Assembly: GCA_964057225.1 (NCBI GenBank) | Contig: OZ059897.1 | Span: 12,586,001 to 12,650,000, forward strand | Length of the DNA: 64,000 nucleotides | Origin: Auanema rhodensis | Lineage: Eukaryota > Animalia > Nematoda | Direction: 5' to 3' | Part shown: positions 30,700 to 41,025 of the stretch, in pieces | Position numbering within the stretch: position 1 is the first letter of the stretch | Layout: the number at the start of each line of letters is the position of its first letter | Position numbers and translations under genes: made by a program | Notes under the pieces: model-generated | Seen by the model: only the letters and a program-made list of their open reading frames with translations | What the model was told of the DNA's origin: nothing | Database searches by the model: none

Positions 30700-32663
30700 T
30701 TAAATTGGTTGAGCATCAAGTGTACATAAGTGAACATTTCTTTTTTGCTTTTGTTGTTTTCTCACAATAAAGTTCAAAAATATATAAGAAAAGAATTAGT
30801 TTACTCTCTTGATCCTGATTGACGATTTAAAGCATCATCAACAGAAAATCTTTTATTATTATTCTGGGACATTGGAGATGGAGTTGTTGATGATGTTGTA
30901 AGTGTAGCAGCTGTAGATCGACGTGGTCGACTAAATTTCAGAGCTTTACCCAAAATATTCCAACGTGATTGAGCCTGAAAAATTAAAATATAGTCTTTGA
31001 GGAAAAAAATTTCTTTTTTAGTTAATGACTCTGAAATAAGGAAGCTGTCATGTTTTGCATTTTTGTGTATGACAAATGAGAGCTTTAAATATGCTACATC
31101 ATACAGTGAGGATTAAACTCCGAACTGAAGGTAGAATCAGTAAAAATAAAAGAAATTTTTTTTTTTAAAGTTATAATATATCAATTATTTTGATTAAGTT
31201 TTAATTTTAAAACTTAAACACTTCAAAACATTCTACAGAATCACTTACACGTGGTGACAGTGAGTCATGTGAACCTAACGATGACGTTGATGCTGTTGAA
31301 GTATATGGATTAAGACCCGGATAATGAGATCGAGAAGACCAGCTTCTAAAACAATTGAAATTGTTTATAAACTTCTGAATTTGTTTACCTCGTATTCAAT
31401 GATGTACTAGGAGGAACTAAGCTATGTCTTGGAGAAGATTTGATTTTAAATTCAAGATATTCACGTGTAACCATTTCTCTATCATGAGGCTTAATCATAT
31501 AATTTTTTTAATATATTAAGATTAAAATATTTCAAAACCTTTTCTTGTCTCCAAAAATATTGTACAAATATTCTTTTTTTGAAATTATTTGAATTTTCTC
31601 CTTCTGAATATGATATATACAAAGTATTAAGTTTATATTTAACAAACGTAATGTTATAGGACTTATTACAGATACAATTCGATGAAATGATGTGCACGTT
31701 CTCCAACTACTAAAATATCGTGAGACTCGAAAAACCTAAATGTATATATATATATATATATTATATTTAAAATATATAATTGATATTGTACCTGATTTAG
31801 AGAGACACTTTGAATTCCTGCACCTCGAGCTCGTGATCTATAAGCTCCTCTCATCTCTCCTCGACATGTCAACAAGGTAACCTTAAAAGCCTTATTAAGC
31901 ATTGAACAAAAATTATTTCAACTTGATGAAAGGTTGTCATATTTTCTGATGAATAAAATCTTGTTGAACAACTAGTTTGCTTCCACCATTGTTGATCACT
32001 TAGAATTTCTTCTTCTGATACTTCATCTCCATCACAAATAAAACAAAAATTATCAACAACCATTGATGGTGGTATCTAAGATTAATAAATTAATTTTATT
32101 TAAATTATGTATATATATATATATAGATATATATAAACATACTTTACTAATATATTTAATAGGACAACGTATAGTATTTGTTAATGTACTTGGTCCATCT
32201 AATGGCTTTTCATCAACTGAGAAAACAGGTATAGGTTCACATGAATTACCATAATGATATAATACTGCTCGTTCTTCTTCAGTACTATCACTTGTTGTAA
32301 GGACTAAAATATAAAATTATATTATTTTATTTTTCAAATCTTTACCGGATTTGCATAGCCTCACAGGACATGCATTAACTTCAACTGGGAAGTCAATAAT
32401 GGAATCCTCTGATTCATCGCGTGAACTGCTAAAGAATTATTCCAAAACAAGTGTAAACATTATTTCATATAAATAATATAATTAAAACATTATACTCTTC
32501 ATAAATAGACAATCCCAATATTATTTAATTTCTCCAGTTGTTTTTTAAACAAAAAAACACAAAACACTGTCAATCTTTTATCATACCTGTCTATAGTTAA
32601 GAATCTTTGTAGCCTTCCTCGCCTAATCATCGTTTCAGATTCATCAAGTATAACCGCAAACAT
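30700..32663 (-). CDS. Stand-alone nematode conserved-domain protein (DUF7747-type by recollection), paralog of the TWK tail domain
   Basis: Eleven phase-compatible exons: 32663(or 32707)-32587, 32428-32346, 32303-32143, 32075-31923, 31881-31792, 31735-31648, 31603-31539, 31489-31389, 31345-31249, 30974-30805, 30760-30700. They encode IPPSMVVDNFCFICDG...QQWWKQTS...SRYFSSWRTCTSFHRIVSVI...FKKRIFVQYFWR. The last acceptor is an atypical GAG, so the final exon is less certain. Confidence 0.8.
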
Positions 32664-33489
32664 GCAGCTCTCATCCTCGACAAATCTTAAATTTCCTTTT
32701 ACTATTCCTGTATTTAAATGTTGTCAGAAATGTAATGGAAACAGTAAAAGAAGTACTACGAGCAGAGGCCACACAGCCAAAAACAGTAGGATGTTTTGGT
32801 AGAAGTATACAAGAAGTAAAGCCTTAGAAGTTTTAGCCCCAAGCTAGGATAGCAATGATAGTACTAGTAGTAGTAATAACAGTAGTAGTACTATACATCA
32901 GAAGTAAAACTTCAATTATGAAACATAAAAACACTTATGTAGCTTGTAGAAGAACGTGCGCCCAAACATACAATGCACACACAGTATGGTAAAAGCCAGA
33001 AAATTTGATACATATATTTATATAATATAGATAATCTTTATTTATAAAATGCACATAATTAGAAAGAAGATATTAATAGTAATGAAATGTCAAATTATCA
33101 GTTTCTAATTAGAAAAAGAAAAACAAAGAAAGAAGTTGTTTGGAAGATATTGTCTTCAAAATTCAACGATTATGACTCAAGAGCTATTTTGATGAAAATA
33201 TAGTTTTTATATAGAAATTTGTTGAAAAAAAATGTTTTTTTTTTCAAATAAAAAACAAAAAGAAAGCAGAAAATAAAAATTGTTTTTAAATAAGAGGTAT
33301 CATTTCTGCAAATTGTTTGTATCAATGAACAGCACTAAGCAAAAAAGTATGAACCTGAGATGGTTTTGCATATATCTTATACATTTTCTGTATCCTTTTT
33401 AGGAAATTTTTCTTCCCTTCGATATACATTTTACTTTGAAATTTACAAAACAAATGAAGGAGGAAGGTAAAAACCCGCATAATTTGGAT

Positions 33490-33770
33490 ATAATATAAGA
33501 GAATTGAAGATAAAAATAGTAAGAAGAAGTAAAAGAGAGAAACAAATGAACGACAAGATCATGAAAGAGGAAATATGAAATGGGGGATAGCGAGATGGAT
33601 ACACAGGGACAGATAGACTGATTGGACAGAGGAAGAAACAGTAACAAACATAGAAATATACAAAAACCTTTTAAGACAGAGAGGGAGAGAAGGGGGGAGA
33701 GAAAGAGAGAGAAAAGAAAAGAAAAAGAGAGAAATAGAGAGTGAGATAGAGAGAGATAAAGAAAAAAACA
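33490..33770. repeat. GA-rich simple sequence between the two DUF7747-type coding blocks
   Basis: Long purine-rich (GA/GAA) tract on the + strand, i.e. CT-rich on the sense strand of the minus genes. Confidence 0.7.
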
Positions 33771-33889
33771 AAAATTTAAAAGTTCTCTCTAAAACAGAAA
33801 GATAAGAAGTTGACAGGGAAAAATTTGGCTAGAAAAAGACATCATCTTCACAGTCTTAGAAATGGCTGAAGCGTATCTAGACAACAAAG

Positions 33890-36800
33890 CTACATCTTCT
33901 GAAACCTCTTCCGTTGAGCAGAATCTGTTACGAAGCGCAATAGACGCTGTCTTCGAGGATCAAATTCCTTTTGCACCCGAGCTTTTTCCACAGCTTTAGC
34001 ATTACGCCATAGATATTGGACAAACAGACGCTTCTTGAAAGCTGGATTACTGTTTCGATCATCAGCAGACACCTTATCGATCATGGTTACAATACGATGG
34101 AATGAAGTGCAAGTCTTCCAGAATGAGTAGAATCGTATTACCTGTAAGAGCAGTATCATAGACAATATCTGCTCAACTCAAAGATATTAATTTCAAATTA
34201 TGCCAAAAATTAATTTGAAAACAAAAAAGTTTGAGAATAGCCCTACTTTGTATACATGAGTCAGGCAAACTTTGTTCTGAGCTTGTTTTGAGGAAGTCCC
34301 GCTAACTGATGATCGTGGTGTTGATGATGAAGAAGCAGTCGGATGATTTACCTATTTAGTAAAAAATAACTTCTTCAAGTAATAACTAATAAGATATAAT
34401 CAAGAAATAATCTACTAGAATCTAATATCTAATTTATTTTCTATTAGCTACTAGAAGGGTAAAAAGTTACTTGAAGAGTTCCACTTGCTAATTTAGCAGT
34501 TATGACTTTGCCTTTAGCTGTTATGCAGTTAACACGATGGAATTGTCGAAGATCCTCCGAGTAAAAATACTGAGAAAATGAGAAATTCATCTTATTATCT
34601 CAGTCTTATATACCTTTGTCGGTCGAGAAGTATGTCTCCACCATTGATCATCACCCAAAATGTCTCCCATTCGTACCCGTTCACCGTCAACCACAAAGCA
34701 ATAATTATCCTATAAATTTGTTTCTTTCCCAAAGAACTGATAAACAAAAAAAGGTAACAATGGTGCAGAGGTACGAATGGCTACTCTAATTCAAATTGGA
34801 AATATTTCTAAATATCAGGGAGGCCAGTGTTCAAAATTTGAATTTAAAGATTGGCCCCCTAGACAAGGATTAGTGTGCGCGGATGCAAGTGCGATTGTGA
34901 GTGCTGGTGCTGATCATGAATGCTACATACCTCAACCATAGTTGGTGGAATAGCTCCTGTCAACATGCTAGATGGTGCTGACATGAGATTTGCCAATGCG
35001 GCTTCTGTTTGTACCGTATCATGATGAACAGAATGCACGGGCATATCTTGATGAAATATCACCTGAATATAGTACTTGCATGTTTTTCAAATGCTAGAGG
35101 AAAACTAATAGAGGACTAATAACTACAGTATATCTTGGAAAATAAAGAAATATAACCCATACCGGGTCCTCTGTGTTCAGCAATGTCTCCGCCGAAAGGC
35201 CAGAATCAACAAGCTCGAAAGCACCAAGATCTAGATCGAAACCACTAGTGCTTTCCTCTTCTGATGGTATATCTACCACATGACTGAAAAGACTTCTGTA
35301 TGAACTTGAAATGTCATCGAAGTCAAGAAGAGCAGTGAAAGTGCCACATCACATTCACGAAAATAAAACCGAATAAAACCATTAAGCGAAAGAATATTTA
35401 AAAGAGTTTGGCAGTGAAAGTGAAAAAAACGAGAACTTAAAAGCTAAGTCAACCACAAAAACCCTCAAAATCACAAAAACTAATGATAGGTGCACCACAA
35501 AAACTAAGAGTTAATCACAACCTCGATTATATGTAAATTAAAATTGGAAATAGTTGTATAGATTAGAAAAAGTAGAAGACAAATACGCACAATTTCCAAT
35601 TACATATTGGAAGAAAAGAAAAAAAAACAAAAAGTCCAATGTAGTAGTAGTCCGTAGCAGTATAAATAGTACATAGGAGAAAAAGAAACGAAATACTTAA
35701 CAGCACCACACGAGGTAAACTATAAGAAGATAATGAAGTCTAGAATTTCTAGTGCTTTCCAATTATTTTAAACAAGCTTGTCGTGTAAAGAAATACCGCA
35801 CAATCACATTTTCACAGTCAAGAGGGGAAGGAAATCGCATTTGCAATAGAAGAGCCATAAGCTAAAGAGAGACGACCACGTAGCAAGATGGTTATATCCA
35901 TATATGAACAATAGGCCATAGAAGCAGAGAATGTGTTTTAACCTGTTACGCCTGGCAGTGATTAGTGCATCTTCGTGCACTTCCATGTGCAGTTGATCCT
36001 CCACTTCAAGCTCCAAAAATATGGATGGTACTTCTGGTGGAATATGTACCATTTCAGCTGGTGAATGTAATCTTATAGATGCTGGTGTATGTGTAGCAGG
36101 TGGCGATGAAATTGACGACGTCATCCGATAGAGGGATGACGTGACTTCAGCTGAGAAGATGTTCGGTTGTGCTTGCGGCAAATAATAAATAGTATCTAGT
36201 GGAGAAGTTGTTGTGGACATTGCACACGATTCCGGTGGACAGGGAGATGCAGCAAAATGTTCCGGTGGTGAAAGAAGGAAAGTAGGTGTCGTAATTGGTG
36301 ATGCCCCGAAAAGTAACGGCAATGTGTCAATGCGGAGCTCCTTTGGTCTATCCTCGATCACGTATTGGCCTCTGTTTGTTTTGAGATTTTATATTATTAT
36401 ATATGTATATATATATTATGTTATTTGTGGAAATTTAACACAAGTAATATTCAAAGTTAAAATCATCTCATGCTTAACTAATTATTTCGTTCAAACTCAA
36501 TAATGTGCTATTATGAAGTGCAATTAATGTTAACAGCATTCAGCTACTTTTTTGCTAATTTTTTGTTCAAAACTCAAAAAATTAAACTTACAAATTCAAA
36601 TCAAATTGATTAATTCAAAAAAAACAAAACAAAAAAAAACGAAAATATCGTACCTCTCATATGGTTTTTCATACTCTTCCAACATTTGAATGTATGAATC
36701 CCAATCTTCCATACATGCCAAGCCAATGGGCTGAAAAACAAATATTTTCTCTGTAGCTTTAAGCATATTCTCTTAATCTTTAATGCTTTTTTATATTCCA

Positions 36801-39800
36801 AAGTATTCTTTTATAATGTTTTCAAGTTCATTTTGTACTTGCGACAATTTGAAAAAAACATGCTAAAAGATGAAGCGAAGCCATGCTAGCAGGTATTCTA
36901 TAGAAACATGAGGAAAATAAAGTTTTACAAGCAAAAAGGAGTAAAGGTTAATTCTAGTAATTATAAGCTATTAAGCAGGAAAAAGACAGTAAGCATGTCC
37001 GGCAAACTTACGTTTCTCGGACTGACAAGCACAACAGAGGTAGGCGAGCTGATAGCAGAATCTGTTACAACAACACGAGGAGAAATGCCAGATTGGCTTT
37101 CTGACGAGCATAATCCCGAAGATTCACGAACATGATTGAACAGCGTTGGTAGATCATCACGCACTATCTGTTTTAATACCCTTGAACGTGGTGATATGTT
37201 TAGCCAATCAACATCATGCAAAGGATCGGAGAGTTTTTCCAGTCGTTCCCTCTTTTTACGTTTAAGCAATGGTTCCGGACTCTCTTCACGGCATTCCATA
37301 TGCGAAGATGGCCGTCGCTCAGGTATTGGAAAAAGCGTTGAACGAAAATTAAAGCGAGGGGTGGAACGCCGAGAGCTCCTATTTGTTCCGGATGGTGAAA
37401 CTGGCGTTGATGGGGCATCTGTAGGTAAAAAGAGGCGAGGCACATGCACTGACTCAGACGTAAGAGGCGTTCGTTCTTGTGGATAGTGTAAATCAGGAGA
37501 TGGTACACGTTGTCCAGCTAGCTGAGTTGCTCGAGGTGATTGAAAGCGTAATAAATTAGCATCTAGCAAATCCATAATATCACATTGAACAGCTAGCTTG
37601 GACAACATGAATGGCTCTGATATACGGAAGCTATCCAGCTTTTGCGAATAAAGCGGCTCAAACTCCTGGCCCTCGCAGGCTTGAAGATTGTGAAGAGATC
37701 GTTTTCTTACTGATGGAGGTGGGCAGGAGAAATGAGCAGCAGGACATGATAATATCCTACGAGATCGTCGAGCTTCCGCTGCTATAATGTCGAAAATTAT
37801 GTGAATTCATTCATATTTGAATAGAAACCTATCTCGCTATAGTCTGGGCTAGGTAAAGGAAATTCGAACTCAAAAGAAGTCACCGACGGATCCGGAGAAC
37901 GAAAGTTTTCCCAATAAGCCTGTAATTCAGCATTGTTTTGCTCATTTCAAAATAAATTCGTACTTCTCTGGCATATACAGATGGTTCTGTTGATAATGAG
38001 CAATGTTCGGAAAGGGATGGACCCGATTCATCCCATGATGCACCACGTGAAAAGTAACGATTAAACATCCTGTAATATTACAATTTTAGATAAAAAATGA
38101 AAATTTTAAAGTATAATTTCTAGAAATAAACTCACATTGATCTGGCTGACGCCGAAGAATTGCTATATATACTAGGGGTTCGGAAACTACAAGTAGATTG
38201 AATTAATTTTATAATAAAACAGCATATACCTTCTGATAGAAAGAATATTAGGAGAAGGCACTTTATCAGGTTGTGGATAAGAAATACTGCATCGGCTTTT
38301 CATAATTGTATCATCTATAGCCCATCTATAATATTATAAGTAAATATCTAATAGTCAAGAAAAATGTTTATATAAAATAGAAAACTTGTCATCTTTTGAA
38401 TAAATTTGCATTTTGAATATAATAACCAATCACTTACTCAGGTGATGGACACTTTTCTTCGAATGTATCTTCAACTAGAGGAGATTCAGGCCTGAATATC
38501 AAAATACAAGTTAATAAAGAAAAATATTTAGATACATATGTTGTTGCATTTGATGCATATACATCTGCAAAATTTCTTCTCCCTGACCCATAGCTAACCG
38601 TCGTTCTATCATCCTCTTTCGCTTCAGTAAATGCAAAAGATCCGTTCCTCGGAACTATAATCAGACATAGTTAAAAGTAGAAAATAAATTTTAAAGATTA
38701 CCTTTCGACCGAAGTAATGTATCTTTTGAATATATTGAATACCGACTAGATCAATACACATAGTTGTGACAGCTAATCCTACACCAAGATACATAAGCAT
38801 CAGAACAATGTAGCTAAAAATATTTATAAAGTATAATTATATTTTAAAAAAATTATTGTAAATATAAATCAAATTAATTCAAATACTCACTCATGATTTT
38901 CAGGAACAATATCACCAAATCCAATAGTTGTTAATGATATAAAAGCTACAAAGTATATAAAATTAAAAATAATATCTATATATGAAAATAATTTACAATA
39001 ATAAAATGCATCCATATAAGACCATCCTTCTAAAAATGAAAACAGAACACCCCCAAATGCTATATACAACTATAAAATTTTAAAATTTAATATAAGTATA
39101 TAAATATAAGAAACAAACCAATAATATTGTAAAAACCATAAGGACCGGTACTTCCGTTTTATCCATTACAAGTTCTTCCCAATCTAACGTTGACGTTGAT
39201 GATTTGTCAGATTGATCTTCACAATCTTCTAGAACAGTCAAATAAACAATAAAACTTCAAATGAATATTAAATATAATACCTTTTCTATTCCCTCGTAGC
39301 CTCTTCCAACGTGTTTTAATTACTATTTTGGCTTTTTTCATCTGTTTGTAAAGCCATATTGTACATTCAGATAGAAATTTACCCAAATCTAAGATTATCA
39401 TGTTATTGAATAAAATATGTCATATATTTTACCTCCAATAGTGATGATAGCTAATGGTGCACCAAACAATGCGAATACAACACATGCTATACGTCCAGAA
39501 GATGTAGCTGGGACAATGTTACCGTAACCTAAACAAAATAACATTACTTCAAATATGTTTTGTATATTATTTTCGTCTAGTTATTTTTCTTATATTTTTT
39601 CATCGATTTTTTTCTTAAAACATCCCAAAATCATGAATGTTGCGACGTCTTTAAATATATGGTCAGTCATATCTATCTCATGCTTTTCATGTCCTTTTTT
39701 ATGATGTCATTTACTTGTCTTCACAAGCACATTTAATATTAACAAGTTGTGACGTCATCAAAGACATTGATCTATGATATGACTTTTTCACAAAATGTTG

Positions 39801-41025
39801 AAACGAAAAAAAAAAGAAAGAAAGAGTACAAAAACAATATGAAACAAAAAGAAGAGATAGTCGTGAGATTTATATATAAAGTATATGCAACAAGCGCTTA
39901 CCAATTGTTGCCATTGTTGTAGCAGCAAAGAATAAAGCACTACTAGCAGTCCACATCTTTTCTCCTTTATCAGCTCTTGATTTTGTATTCCTAAAATCAT
40001 TTTTCACAATTCAATTAAATATTCTTTAGATTATATCTAATTTACCTATGTCGTTTTGTTCTATCTGGATCATCCTTATCAGCTGAAGTCAATTGAAGAT
40101 TTGATACCCGAACATCCGGATACCTACAAAATAAATCTCAATTAGCCCAATGTATTGGAAACGATAACCAACCGGACATATTGTTCTTTGAAAGCTTTAT
40201 AAATTTTATCATTGAACCTATATAATTCTTCTTCTAATGAGTCTTTCCATACCCGTTTGGATTGATCGCGACCTTAAAAATTATTTTCCATATTCATGGC
40301 AGTAACTTACGTTTTACAAGATCAAGCATACGCATTCTCATATCGCCTATATTGTTTTTTCCTATTGTTTTCAACTGAAATACTCATATAACTATAAGAT
40401 AATGAGTAATTATAATAATGATACAACCGGTTTATTTGATTGAAAATATAGAAATAACTTTTTTCTTTAACGACTTTGTTACGCTATGATTTATGCTAAT
40501 TTTAATTATTTCTTTTGCAAATAAAAAATAAAAAAATATACTTATATCATTTAATTAAAAAATAAATGATGTTTTATATTTAAATGGAATTCCCATGGGA
40601 ACTGTTTTCGACATTAACAGACATATGTTAATCGACTCATGGAATGAGTTTCGGAATAAATTTAGCCTAGAAAATTGAGAGATGGATGACAAAACATCGA
40701 CAAAGTGAGCAACAAAGTTGGTTTAGAAATTATTTTTTATATTTTAAAGGTTTGAAGCTTCTAAAAAGTACTTACACGATCTTCATTTGGCGATTCCAAT
40801 CTATAGAATATATAAGCACCAATAACTGCATAGAGACAAACGACTGCCACAAGGGCTACGTGAGGAAATACAAGTTTAATATACTAAATTTAAAGTTTTC
40901 ATATTTTCAAACTGTAAGAATATTCTTATTTCACAAACTTTTTTTATTCGGCTTTGTGTCGAAGAGTTGACGGTGTCGGTTGTTGTCTCCAGCAAGCCCT
41001 CTATTTCTTTTAACTGTTCCTCCAT
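33890..41025 (-). CDS. TWK-family two-pore-domain (K2P) potassium channel with a long Ser/Pro-rich cytoplasmic tail ending in a DUF7747-type domain
   Basis: TM1 FPHVALVAVVCLYAVIGAYIFYRLESPNE; P1 FAATTMATIGYGNIVP; P2 FISLTTIGFGDIVPEN; TM4 followed by YIQKIHYFGRK. Resembles C. elegans TWK channels (possibly twk-1, from memory only). Fifteen further exons (38654 to 33890) join in frame. The start at ATG 41025 is minimal and upstream exons are possible. Channel core confidence is about 0.95; the fused model is less certain. Confidence 0.75.

What the first reader, a model, noticed from the sequence alone, without database searches (positions are those of the whole stretch)
33890..38654. K2P potassium channel reads in frame into an ~865-aa tail ending in a conserved, possibly DNA-binding domain
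Seen: after TM4 (HYFGRK), 15 exons join with GT-AG and matching phase at every junction and no stop (2,598 nt including the stop). Exons: 38654-38536, 38491-38438, 38325-38230, 38186-38136, 38069-37964, 37919-37829, 37781-37012, 36730-36654, 36371-35943, 35283-35163, 35062-34931, 34709-34614, 34569-34471, 34351-34247, 34141-33890. The tail is Ser/Pro-rich, carries an NLS-like LKRKKRER, and ends in PPTMVEDNYCFVVDG...DDQWWRH...VYKVIRFYSFWKTCTSFHRIVTMI...KRLFVQYLWR with a basic C-terminus. Established: K2P tails are usually much shorter, and channel-derived nuclear fragments exist (Cav1.2 CCAT, CACNA1A alpha1ACT). Inference: the motif order (P..FxxD..D..W..YxxxxxxxxFxR..hVxY) recalls the CG-1 DNA-binding domain of CAMTA, so this could be a channel-tethered or cleavable transcription regulator.
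Basis: partly seen in the sequence, partly recalled or inferred. Interest (0 to 1): 0.85.

Follow-up and report, generated by a model that had tools for sequence, protein, structure and literature searches.

The report
Potassium channel carrying CG-1-like tail domain
This is a nematode's copy of the TWK-2 potassium leak channel; its messenger RNA does run on into a long tail, and the tail ends in a compact domain predicted to fold like the DNA-binding domains of CAMTA and WOPR transcription factors, a first clue to a tail whose role the literature calls unknown.

Summary
All 15 exons have GT-AG borders and join into one 2,598-nt frame. Spliced RNA contigs from four runs of one study show 11 of the 14 junctions, including those joining the channel exons to the tail. 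The gene is the orthologue of C. elegans twk-2. The same channel-plus-tail-plus-domain layout is in RefSeq (NP_001350988.1), on one intronless Caenorhabditis mRNA contig, and in gene models from nematode clades I, III, IV and V. A 2023 paper already notes the tail and says its sequence gives no clue to function, so the architecture is not new.

The terminal ~190-aa domain has no Pfam or PDB sequence match. Two AlphaFold models (pLDDT 84 and 93) both find CG-1/CAMTA clusters as the nearest Atlas shapes. Their top PDB neighbours are WOPR, GCM, Ssr4 and NAC, the subgroup of the WRKY/GCM1 clan that Holm (2022) united with CG-1. Profile-profile comparison with CG-1 is not significant.

DNA binding, cleavage and nuclear entry are all untested. 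I also found an in-frame alternative splice that removes 233 aa, and a second copy of the domain downstream that an alternative donor could reach.

The parts
38702..41025 (-). Exons coding for the K2P channel body (start ATG at 41025, through TM4 ending ..HYFGRK)
   Evidence: tblastn is colinear with residues 1-368 of Haemonchus P0004 and C. elegans P0076. Pfam Ion_trans_2 matches 38887-39069. RNA joints 38654/38702, 38813/38891, 38945/38997 and 39069/39119.
35943..38654 (-). Tail exons 1-9: a mostly disordered Ser/Pro-rich cytoplasmic tail with conserved islands
   Evidence: Splice sites and frame. RNA joints for introns 2-6, and a 2,301-nt contig ending at 35943. Islands are conserved in clades III-V.
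36731..37710 (-). Segment removed by an alternative splice (donor after 37711, acceptor at 36730). It takes out 233 aa in frame, including the NLS-like LKRKKRER at 37266-37243.
   Evidence: The 36730/37711 joint is seen in all four runs. GT lies at 37710-37709 and the frame is kept. C. elegans NP_001350988.1 has the same short form.
37741..37770 (-). Conserved RRxxSCP motif, a candidate phosphorylation / 14-3-3 site, kept in both splice forms
   Evidence: Present in all seven aligned orthologues; coordinates. The functional reading rests on my own knowledge and was not tested.
35284..35942 (-). Intron 9, the weak link between tail and domain exons. It is covered end to end by low-depth unspliced contigs in the runs taken together.
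   Evidence: Contigs 35257-35699, 35593-35972 and 35342-35805. Sequence. No in-frame ATG lies between the last stop (35351) and exon 10.
33890..35283 (-). Exons 10-15: acidic lead-in (FDLDLGAFELVDSG) and domain copy 1. The folded core runs about 35044-33968, as two conserved blocks split by a Ser-rich linker, followed by a basic C-terminal helix and the stop at 33890.
   Evidence: RNA joints for introns 10-14. 57 representative homologues. Alignments A1 and A2. AlphaFold models. Fold searches.
34567..34652 (-). DDQWW / WWRHTSRPTKY hairpin: a DxxxW motif plus the most conserved loop of the domain, the candidate recognition loop. The span includes the 44-nt intron 12 (34570-34613).
   Evidence: The W is invariant, and D sits at W-4 in 20 of 29 (A1) and 22 of 32 (A2) sequences. 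PMC9252788 reports that DxxxW stabilises the DNA-recognition loop in WOPR (read). The plant CG-1 sequences I fetched carry D-G-H-N-W. Structural equivalence was not checked by superposition.
33281..33889 (-). 3' untranslated region of the short (one-domain) form, with a CT-rich low-complexity stretch at 33600-33780
   Evidence: The 1.4-1.6-kb contigs read straight through the stop to 33781. The X1 contig (record 1) carries about 500 further letters beyond that point.
31389..33906 (-). Predicted alternative 3' part: a donor inside exon 15 (last base 33906, then GTTTCA) joined to eight further exons encoding a second, paralogous domain copy. Exons: 32685-32587, 32428-32346, 32303-32143, 32075-31923, 31881-31792, 31735-31648, 31603-31539, 31489-31389. 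The frame stays open beyond 31389.
   Evidence: All borders are GT-AG and in frame without a stop. tblastn matches the second copies in C. briggsae, Diploscapter, Ditylenchus, Aphelenchoides and Thelazia. The join reads ..RKR|FVEDES..FAVIL.., as in C. briggsae P0006 and Diploscapter P0005. Not tested with reads.

Best explanation
The locus is the orthologue of C. elegans twk-2, from a low-GC clade V nematode close to Heterorhabditis.

Shown:
- One mRNA joins a TRESK-like two-pore potassium channel to a long cytoplasmic tail.
- The tail is mostly disordered, carries short motifs conserved across nematodes, and is alternatively spliced in frame (233 aa in or out).
- It ends in a ~190-aa beta-rich domain that forms a nematode-only family with no Pfam model.

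Inferred from predicted structure: this domain belongs to the WOPR / CG-1 / Ssr4 / NAC subgroup of the WRKY-GCM1 clan, with CG-1 as nearest neighbour. It keeps a DxxxW motif ahead of its most conserved hairpin and is basic overall.

Inferred from homology: an alternative donor in the last exon adds a second, more diverged copy of the domain.

Proposed mechanism (about 40-45% likely, untested): the domain binds nucleic acid, most likely DNA. The channel would then hold a gene-regulatory module at the membrane, to be freed by proteolysis, or made in smaller amounts from transcripts that start in intron 9. The conserved NLS-like motif in the spliced-out segment would decide whether a released fragment can enter the nucleus.
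For: Frame and splice sites.

Orthology and fusion elsewhere:
- Ion_trans_2 plus the domain in Haemonchus, C. briggsae, Bursaphelenchus, Strongyloides, Cercopithifilaria, Romanomermis and Trichinella.
- C. elegans NP_001350988.1, 1,016 aa, with the domain at 729-1016, 71% identical.
- An intronless 3,838-nt Caenorhabditis mRNA contig carrying the whole 1,026-aa fusion.
- PMC10320741 describes the large tail as unique among K2P channels.

Domain:
- High-confidence models, pLDDT 84 and 93.
- Atlas top hits are CG-1 clusters for both models: TM 0.48-0.50, 121-125 residues, 3.6-4.0 A.
- DxxxW is kept in 20 of 29 sequences.
- The core has pI 8.4-9.5 in most members, and block 2 plus the C-terminus carries net +15.
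Against: No sequence-level link to CG-1: no Pfam hit at E<=10 in any of 32 members, and hhalign P=0.056 against 0.076 for the reversed control. My CG-1 profile was plant-only and shallow (Neff 1.5).

Two members of the same structural subgroup (Ssr4-N and At3g16750) are thought not to bind DNA (PMC9252788), so the fold does not prove the function.

The exon 9-10 junction was not among the joints displayed.

The published GFP::TWK-2 sits at cell surfaces and dendrite tips. It is N-terminally tagged, so it says nothing about the C-terminus.
Confidence: 0.6

Rival explanations
1. The terminal domain has this DNA-binding-type fold but has taken on a new role, as proposed for Ssr4-N and At3g16750. 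On this reading it is a protein-protein, cytoskeletal or membrane-proximal docking module. It would position or gate the channel, for example by tethering TWK-2 near sensory cilia, and never act in the nucleus.
For: PMC9252788 argues that two families of the same subgroup lost or never had DNA binding. PMC10320741 proposes a cytoskeletal tether and finds GFP::TWK-2 enriched next to mechanosensory cilia. The domain is permanently fused to a membrane protein in the C. elegans and long-read-based C. briggsae models, and my length-limited search (179-570 aa) found no named C. elegans or C. briggsae short form. The second copies often lack the D of DxxxW.
Against: The domain is basic, with a strongly basic C-terminal extension. 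DxxxW and the hairpin are the most conserved part in first copies. A conserved NLS-like motif sits in the tail. None of this is decisive.
Confidence: 0.4
2. Exons 10-15 mainly make a protein of their own, from transcripts that start in intron 9 or are trans-spliced at exon 10. On this reading the channel-domain fusion is a minor read-through product, and the locus is really two nested genes.
For: Contig depth for exons 10-15 is 2.0, 3.9, 3.3 and 1.1 times that of exon 9 in the four runs, so it is not a fixed ratio. Intron 9 is covered by unspliced contigs across the four runs taken together. The 3' contig stops 2 nt rather than the expected 3 nt past the acceptor in three runs, which hints at a third upstream partner. 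Fully spliced domain ORFs preceded by 740-880 nt of intron-like sequence ending at an acceptor occur on contigs of two other, unnamed organisms, presumably nematodes. Separate gene models exist in Ancylostoma ceylanicum, Dictyocaulus and Toxocara.
Against: No spliced leader was found on those contigs. In this window no in-frame ATG lies between the last intron stop and exon 10, and the first Met (MPVHSV) is not conserved as Met. Many short database proteins simply start at an internal Met of the fusion, for example P0104. A whole fused mRNA contig exists in Caenorhabditis. Depth per contig is a poor measure and 3' bias could explain it.
Confidence: 0.2
3. The structural matches are only a common beta-sheet arrangement, and the domain is a new fold unrelated to the WRKY-GCM1 clan.
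Confidence: 0.15

Closest known systems
C. elegans TWK-2 (NP_001350988.1; twk-2, chromosome II), the K2P channel of dopaminergic mechanosensory neurons
   Same: It is colinear over the channel, the tail islands and the terminal domain, which is 71% identical over 288 aligned positions. It has the same short-exon-7 junction (..PPPS|PIGLACM..). The large tail is described in PMC10320741.
   Different: It is from a different species. The window also shows the long-exon-7 form and a predicted two-domain form, which is known from C. briggsae models. The published work gives the tail no fold or function.
CG-1 DNA-binding domain of CAMTA transcription factors (Pfam PF03859)
   Same: It is the best structural match in the ESM Atlas for both models. 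It has the DxxxW motif before a basic hairpin and a buried hydrophobic last strand (..VHY.. against ..VQY..). The overall size is similar.
   Different: There is no significant sequence or profile similarity. The nematode domain is split by a variable Ser-rich linker. It lacks the CAMTA context of TIG, ankyrin and IQ domains and sits at the end of an ion channel. Nematodes have a normal CAMTA (camt-1) as well.
WOPR domain (Wor1 / Gti1-Pac2, PF09729), PDB 4qtj and 4m8b
   Different: WOPR is a fungal family. There was no Pfam hit, and whether the linker lies at the same topological place was not checked.
Ssr4 N-terminal domain (PDB 7k7v) and At3g16750
   Different: They are thought not to bind DNA and show no strong DNA-binding electrostatic signal (At3g16750 also has an acidic tail). 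The nematode domain is basic.
Channel-encoded nuclear factors (Cav1.2 CCAT, CACNA1A alpha1ACT) and membrane-tethered NAC factors released by proteolysis (from my own knowledge)
   Same: A regulatory C-terminal part is encoded in, or tethered to, a membrane protein gene. NAC shares the fold superfamily.
   Different: No release, internal promoter or nuclear localisation has been shown here. In those channels the fragment is not a recognised DNA-binding fold.

Membership tests
Two-pore-domain (K2P/TWK) potassium channels | Two Ion_trans_2 pore domains in one subunit of four transmembrane helices | tested here: met
   Ion_trans_2 matches 38887-39069. Orthologues show two stretches. The window is colinear with their residues 1-368.
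TWK-2 orthology group | Colinear similarity through channel, tail islands and terminal domain to C. elegans TWK-2 | tested here: met
.
CG-1 (PF03859) | Match to the family HMM | tested here: not met
   No CG-1 hit at E<=10 in 32 family members, nor in 20 full-length proteins at E<=0.01.
CG-1 (PF03859) | Profile-profile similarity | tested here: not met
   hhalign gave P=0.14 for A1 and 0.056 for A2, against 0.076 for a reversed control. The CG-1 profile was weak (12 plant fragments).
CG-1 (PF03859) | Same three-dimensional fold | tested here: met
   CG-1 clusters are the top Atlas matches for two models: TM 0.48-0.50, 121-125 residues aligned, 3.6-4.0 A. This is borderline in size but reproducible.
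CG-1 (PF03859) | Residues needed for DNA binding in CAMTA3 (W75, H88, YY102/103, Y132; PMC10417383) and the DxxxW loop motif | tested here: inconclusive
   The invariant W with D at W-4 is present, and an aromatic in ..VQY.. could match Y132. No counterpart of H88 is evident. No residue-level superposition was available.
CG-1 (PF03859) | Sequence-specific binding to CGCG-type DNA | not testable with these tools
   Needs EMSA, PBM or SELEX.
WRKY/GCM1 clan, WOPR-CG-1-Ssr4-NAC subgroup (Holm 2022, PMC9252788) | Helix plus five-strand sheet core, similar to member families at the Z seen between them (5.4-9.8) | tested here: met
WRKY/GCM1 clan, classical zinc-binding members | Cys/His zinc ligands | tested here: inconclusive
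   Two Cys and one His are nearly invariant (NYC, KTC, FH). Their geometry could not be inspected because no coordinates were available.
WOPR (PF09729) | Match to the family HMM | tested here: not met
   No hit at E<=10.
Channel-derived or membrane-tethered transcription regulators | Release of the domain, by own transcript or by cleavage, and nuclear entry | tested here: inconclusive
   There are only hints of transcripts starting in intron 9. Cleavage and localisation are not testable here. The published tag is N-terminal.

The most novel reading that the evidence does not exclude
TWK-2 is a membrane-tethered transcription regulator. On this reading a leak potassium channel of sensory neurons carries one or two CG-1/WOPR-type DNA-binding domains at the end of a long regulated tail. 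The domain would be freed by proteolysis, or made from an internal start. Alternative splicing of the NLS-bearing segment would then control its entry to the nucleus. That would give nematodes a direct channel-to-gene signalling route that arose with the phylum.
Probability: 0.25. Interest if true: 0.85.

Novelty: new variant of a known kind. Interest (0 to 1): 0.62.

Why it matters
TWK-2 damps the dopaminergic touch neurons that sense food. It is reported to be the only K2P subunit with such a tail, and the paper that studied it says the sequence offers no clue to the tail's function.

A reproducible structural link to the CG-1/WOPR/NAC group of DNA-binding domains turns that open question into concrete experiments: a C-terminal tag, a domain deletion, and a DNA-binding assay.

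If the domain does bind DNA, this would be an ion channel carrying a recognised sequence-specific DNA-binding fold, conserved across all major nematode clades including animal and plant parasites. If it does not, it is a further case of this fold being put to another use, and it still defines an unnamed nematode-specific domain family that merits a Pfam entry.

Tried and rejected
- Pfam on single exons and on 32 domain sequences: nothing relevant.
- PDB sequence profile search: nothing.
- Foldseek against the PDB with both models: no match at E<=0.001, with lipocalins and triphosphate tunnel enzymes at poor TM.
- Language-model look-alikes: no usable hit for P0003, and noise-level IQ / myosin lever hits (0.77) for P0040.
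- hhalign against a CG-1 alignment built from 12 plant fragments: not above the reversed control. All 120 listed hits carried PF03859, but most were exon fragments running into introns.
- SL1/SL2 leader search on three mRNA contigs: none.
- UniProt names on orthologues ('SH3 domain-containing', 'BEN', 'RING-type', 'HTH_Tnp_Tc3', 'NARG2_C'): I did not follow these up. No such Pfam family was found in the domain region.
- Read laying was limited to one call starting at 33600, so the 33906 donor and the second copy could not be tested.
Full report
**Observation.** Every acceptor is AG and every donor GT. The pieces sum to 2,598 nt, and frame 0 is open to a single terminal stop (865 aa); the other frames hold 37 and 61 stops. 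Intron lengths of 43-659 nt, many of 43-47 nt, fit a rhabditid nematode. The window has 31.5% G+C.

**RNA evidence.** Four runs of one 2019 study hold 50-57% of the sampled words of 33890-38950, roughly the exonic share. Their contigs are spliced, so I treat them as RNA.
- I laid them on 33600-39560 (5,961 letters, within the operators' limit).
- They show the junctions of introns 2, 3, 4, 5, 6, 10, 11, 12, 13 and 14.
- They also show four junctions inside the channel part, including 38654/38702, which links TM4 to the tail.
- Intron 1 appears as a 13-letter loose end.
- A 2,301-nt contig in X4 ends exactly at 35943 (the exon 9 donor). From its length, it must reach back through the tail into the channel exons.

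The exon 9-10 junction is not in the 15 joints printed (5 more were not shown). The indirect evidence is as follows.
- Contigs stop exactly at 35943 and at 35285/35286, which is what a splice branch produces in an assembly graph.
- Exon 9 ends ..AACAG and intron 9 ends ..TTTCAG, so a stop 3 nt past the acceptor is expected for those two partners.
- Three runs stop at 2 nt. I cannot explain this. It could mean a third upstream partner.

All four runs carry a joint 36730/37711. It uses a GT at 37710-37709 inside exon 7 and removes 233 aa in frame. Contigs covering 37012-37740 show that the long form exists too.

**Identity.** I searched the exon-15 peptide against 1.84 billion representative proteins. 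It found 57 proteins, and every one with a name is from a nematode.
- The long ones carry Ion_trans_2 at the N-terminus and the domain at the C-terminus: Haemonchus, C. briggsae, Bursaphelenchus, Strongyloides, Cercopithifilaria, Romanomermis and Trichinella. These span clades I, III, IV and V.
- C. elegans NP_001350988.1 ('TWiK family of potassium channels', 1,016 aa) has the domain at 729-1016, 71% identical to the window. It has the same short-exon-7 junction.
- A 3,838-nt intronless contig from a Caenorhabditis RNA assembly carries the whole 1,026-aa fusion in one ORF.
- C. briggsae names the channel part CBR-TWK-2. Its older annotation split off the domain part as CBG03693, and the newer models fuse them.
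- Heterorhabditis bacteriophora P0092 is 95-98% identical in well-predicted exons, so the window comes from a close relative.

**Literature.** PMC10320741 (Cell Rep 2023) shows that TWK-2 damps dopaminergic mechanosensory neurons. [quoted passage not shown] It suggests a cytoskeletal tether. Its reporter is GFP::TWK-2, tagged at the N-terminus, so the fate of the C-terminus is unknown. In my single combined search of the held library for twk-2 with CAMTA, CG-1 or camt-1, none of the ten best-ranked papers contained twk-2. The architecture is therefore known; the nature of the terminal domain is not.

**Tail anatomy.** The tail is acidic and Ser/Pro/Thr-rich. It holds islands conserved from Parascaris to Caenorhabditis:
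- the helix after TM4;
- SWDESGPSLSEHCSLSTEPS;
- an RRxxSCP motif, RRSNSCP in Caenorhabditis, which looks like a PKA / 14-3-3 site (my reading, untested);
- SFRISEPFMLSKLA;
- PIGLACMEDWDSYIQMLEEY.

**The terminal domain.** Alignments of 32 and 35 members show two conserved blocks separated by a variable Ser-rich linker. The blocks are PV.S...PP.MV.DNYCFVVDG...DD.WW..TSRPT.YYYSEDL..F.RV...KGK.I.A and VPL..VYKV.R.YSFWKTC.SFHRI......FKKR.FVQYLWRNAK. Pfam and PDB sequence searches find nothing.

AlphaFold2 gives confident, mostly beta models for two members that are 34-35% identical:
- an Ancylostoma first copy, pLDDT 84, with only the linker and N-terminus low;
- a Steinernema second-copy type, pLDDT 93, pTM 0.89.

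The shape searches agree between the two models.
- In the ESM Atlas, the best match for both models is a CG-1 cluster. For the second model the top three are all CG-1/CAMTA clusters: TM 0.48-0.50, 121-125 residues aligned, 3.6-4.0 A.
- The same paper notes a DxxxW motif that stabilises the DNA-recognition loop in WOPR. The plant CG-1 sequences I fetched carry D-G-H-N-W. The nematode family has an invariant W with D at W-4 in 20 of 29 sequences, DDQWW in the window. That motif is followed by its most conserved hairpin, WWRHTSRPTKY.
- The core is basic (pI 8.4-9.5 in most members), and block 2 plus the C-terminal helix carries net +15.

**Against homology with CG-1 in particular.** Profile-profile comparison is not significant and is no better than a reversed control. 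My CG-1 profile was shallow. Foldseek sees nothing in the PDB. I therefore place the domain in the structural subgroup, nearest to CG-1. I do not file it as a CG-1 family member.

**A second copy.** tblastn with two-domain proteins of other nematodes lights up 32400-31390 on the same strand. A GT inside exon 15 (after 33906) joined to an acceptor at 32685 reads ..RKR|FVEDES..FAVIL.., the same join as in C. briggsae and Diploscapter. Eight further GT-AG exons keep the frame open through a full second domain. The RNA contigs I could see read straight through the stop at 33890, so the one-domain form is the main one here. The two-domain form is a prediction.

**One gene or two?**
For a separate domain transcript:
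- the depth of exons 10-15 relative to exon 9 varies from 1.1 to 3.9 across runs;
- intron 9 is covered by unspliced contigs across the four runs taken together;
- contigs of two other, unnamed organisms (presumably nematodes) carry a fully spliced domain ORF behind 740-880 nt of intron-like sequence ending at an acceptor;
- several species annotate a 270-330 aa stand-alone protein.

Against:
- no spliced leader was found on those contigs;
- no in-frame ATG lies upstream of exon 10 in this window;
- many short proteins merely begin at an internal Met of the fusion;
- my length-limited search (179-570 aa) found no named C. elegans or C. briggsae short form.

I put a substantial separate product at about 20%.

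**Mechanism.**
- Shown: a fused channel-tail-domain mRNA, alternative in-frame splicing, and conservation across the phylum.
- Inferred from models: a WOPR/CG-1-type fold with its loop-stabilising motif.
- Proposed: nucleic-acid binding by a domain that the channel holds at the membrane until it is released. The spliced NLS-like segment would control nuclear entry.
- Main rival: the fold has been re-used as a docking module, as argued for Ssr4 and At3g16750. That would fit the cytoskeletal-tether idea of PMC10320741.

**Verdict.** The architecture is already annotated and published for C. elegans. The transcription-factor function remains open and is now directly testable.

Noticed in passing
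window 37741-37770 (minus strand): An RRxxSCP motif is conserved in the tails of all seven aligned orthologues (RRSNSCP in Caenorhabditis). It looks like a PKA/CaMKII plus 14-3-3 mode-1 site and resembles, as I recall it, the regulatory site in the TRESK loop. It is kept in both splice forms.
   Followed up: partly
window 37243-37266 (minus strand): The NLS-like LKRKKRER is conserved (PEPLLKRKKRER..DWLNVSPR) and lies inside the 233-aa segment removed by the alternative 37711/36730 splice. Splicing could therefore switch it on or off.
   Followed up: partly
window 35283-35286: The contig covering exons 10-15 stops 2 nt past the exon-10 acceptor in runs X1-X3 but 3 nt in X4. Exon 9 and intron 9 share the 3-nt suffix CAG, so a 2-nt stop hints at a third upstream partner, such as a spliced leader or another exon.
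   Followed up: no
window 33600-33780: The 3' UTR holds a CT-rich low-complexity stretch, which reads as SLSLSISL.. in one frame. The reads tool skipped it as a repeat.
   Followed up: no
proteins P0080, P0010, P0100, P0083, P0092, P0002, P0017: UniProt's automatic names for orthologues or fragments of this gene disagree with each other: SH3, BEN, RING-type, HTH_Tnp_Tc3_1 and NARG2_C. Several probably come from gene models fused to neighbours. None matches a Pfam family in the domain itself.
   Followed up: partly
The strain list of PMC10320741 puts twk-2 on chromosome II in C. elegans, where unc-52/perlecan also lies (from memory). The neighbourhood may therefore be syntenic.
   Followed up: no
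L001:1-878 and L002:1-742: mRNA-like contigs of two other, unnamed organisms (presumably nematodes) carry a long AT-rich unspliced leader ending in a splice acceptor, directly upstream of a fully spliced domain ORF. This suggests starts inside the upstream intron, or stable retention of it.
   Followed up: partly
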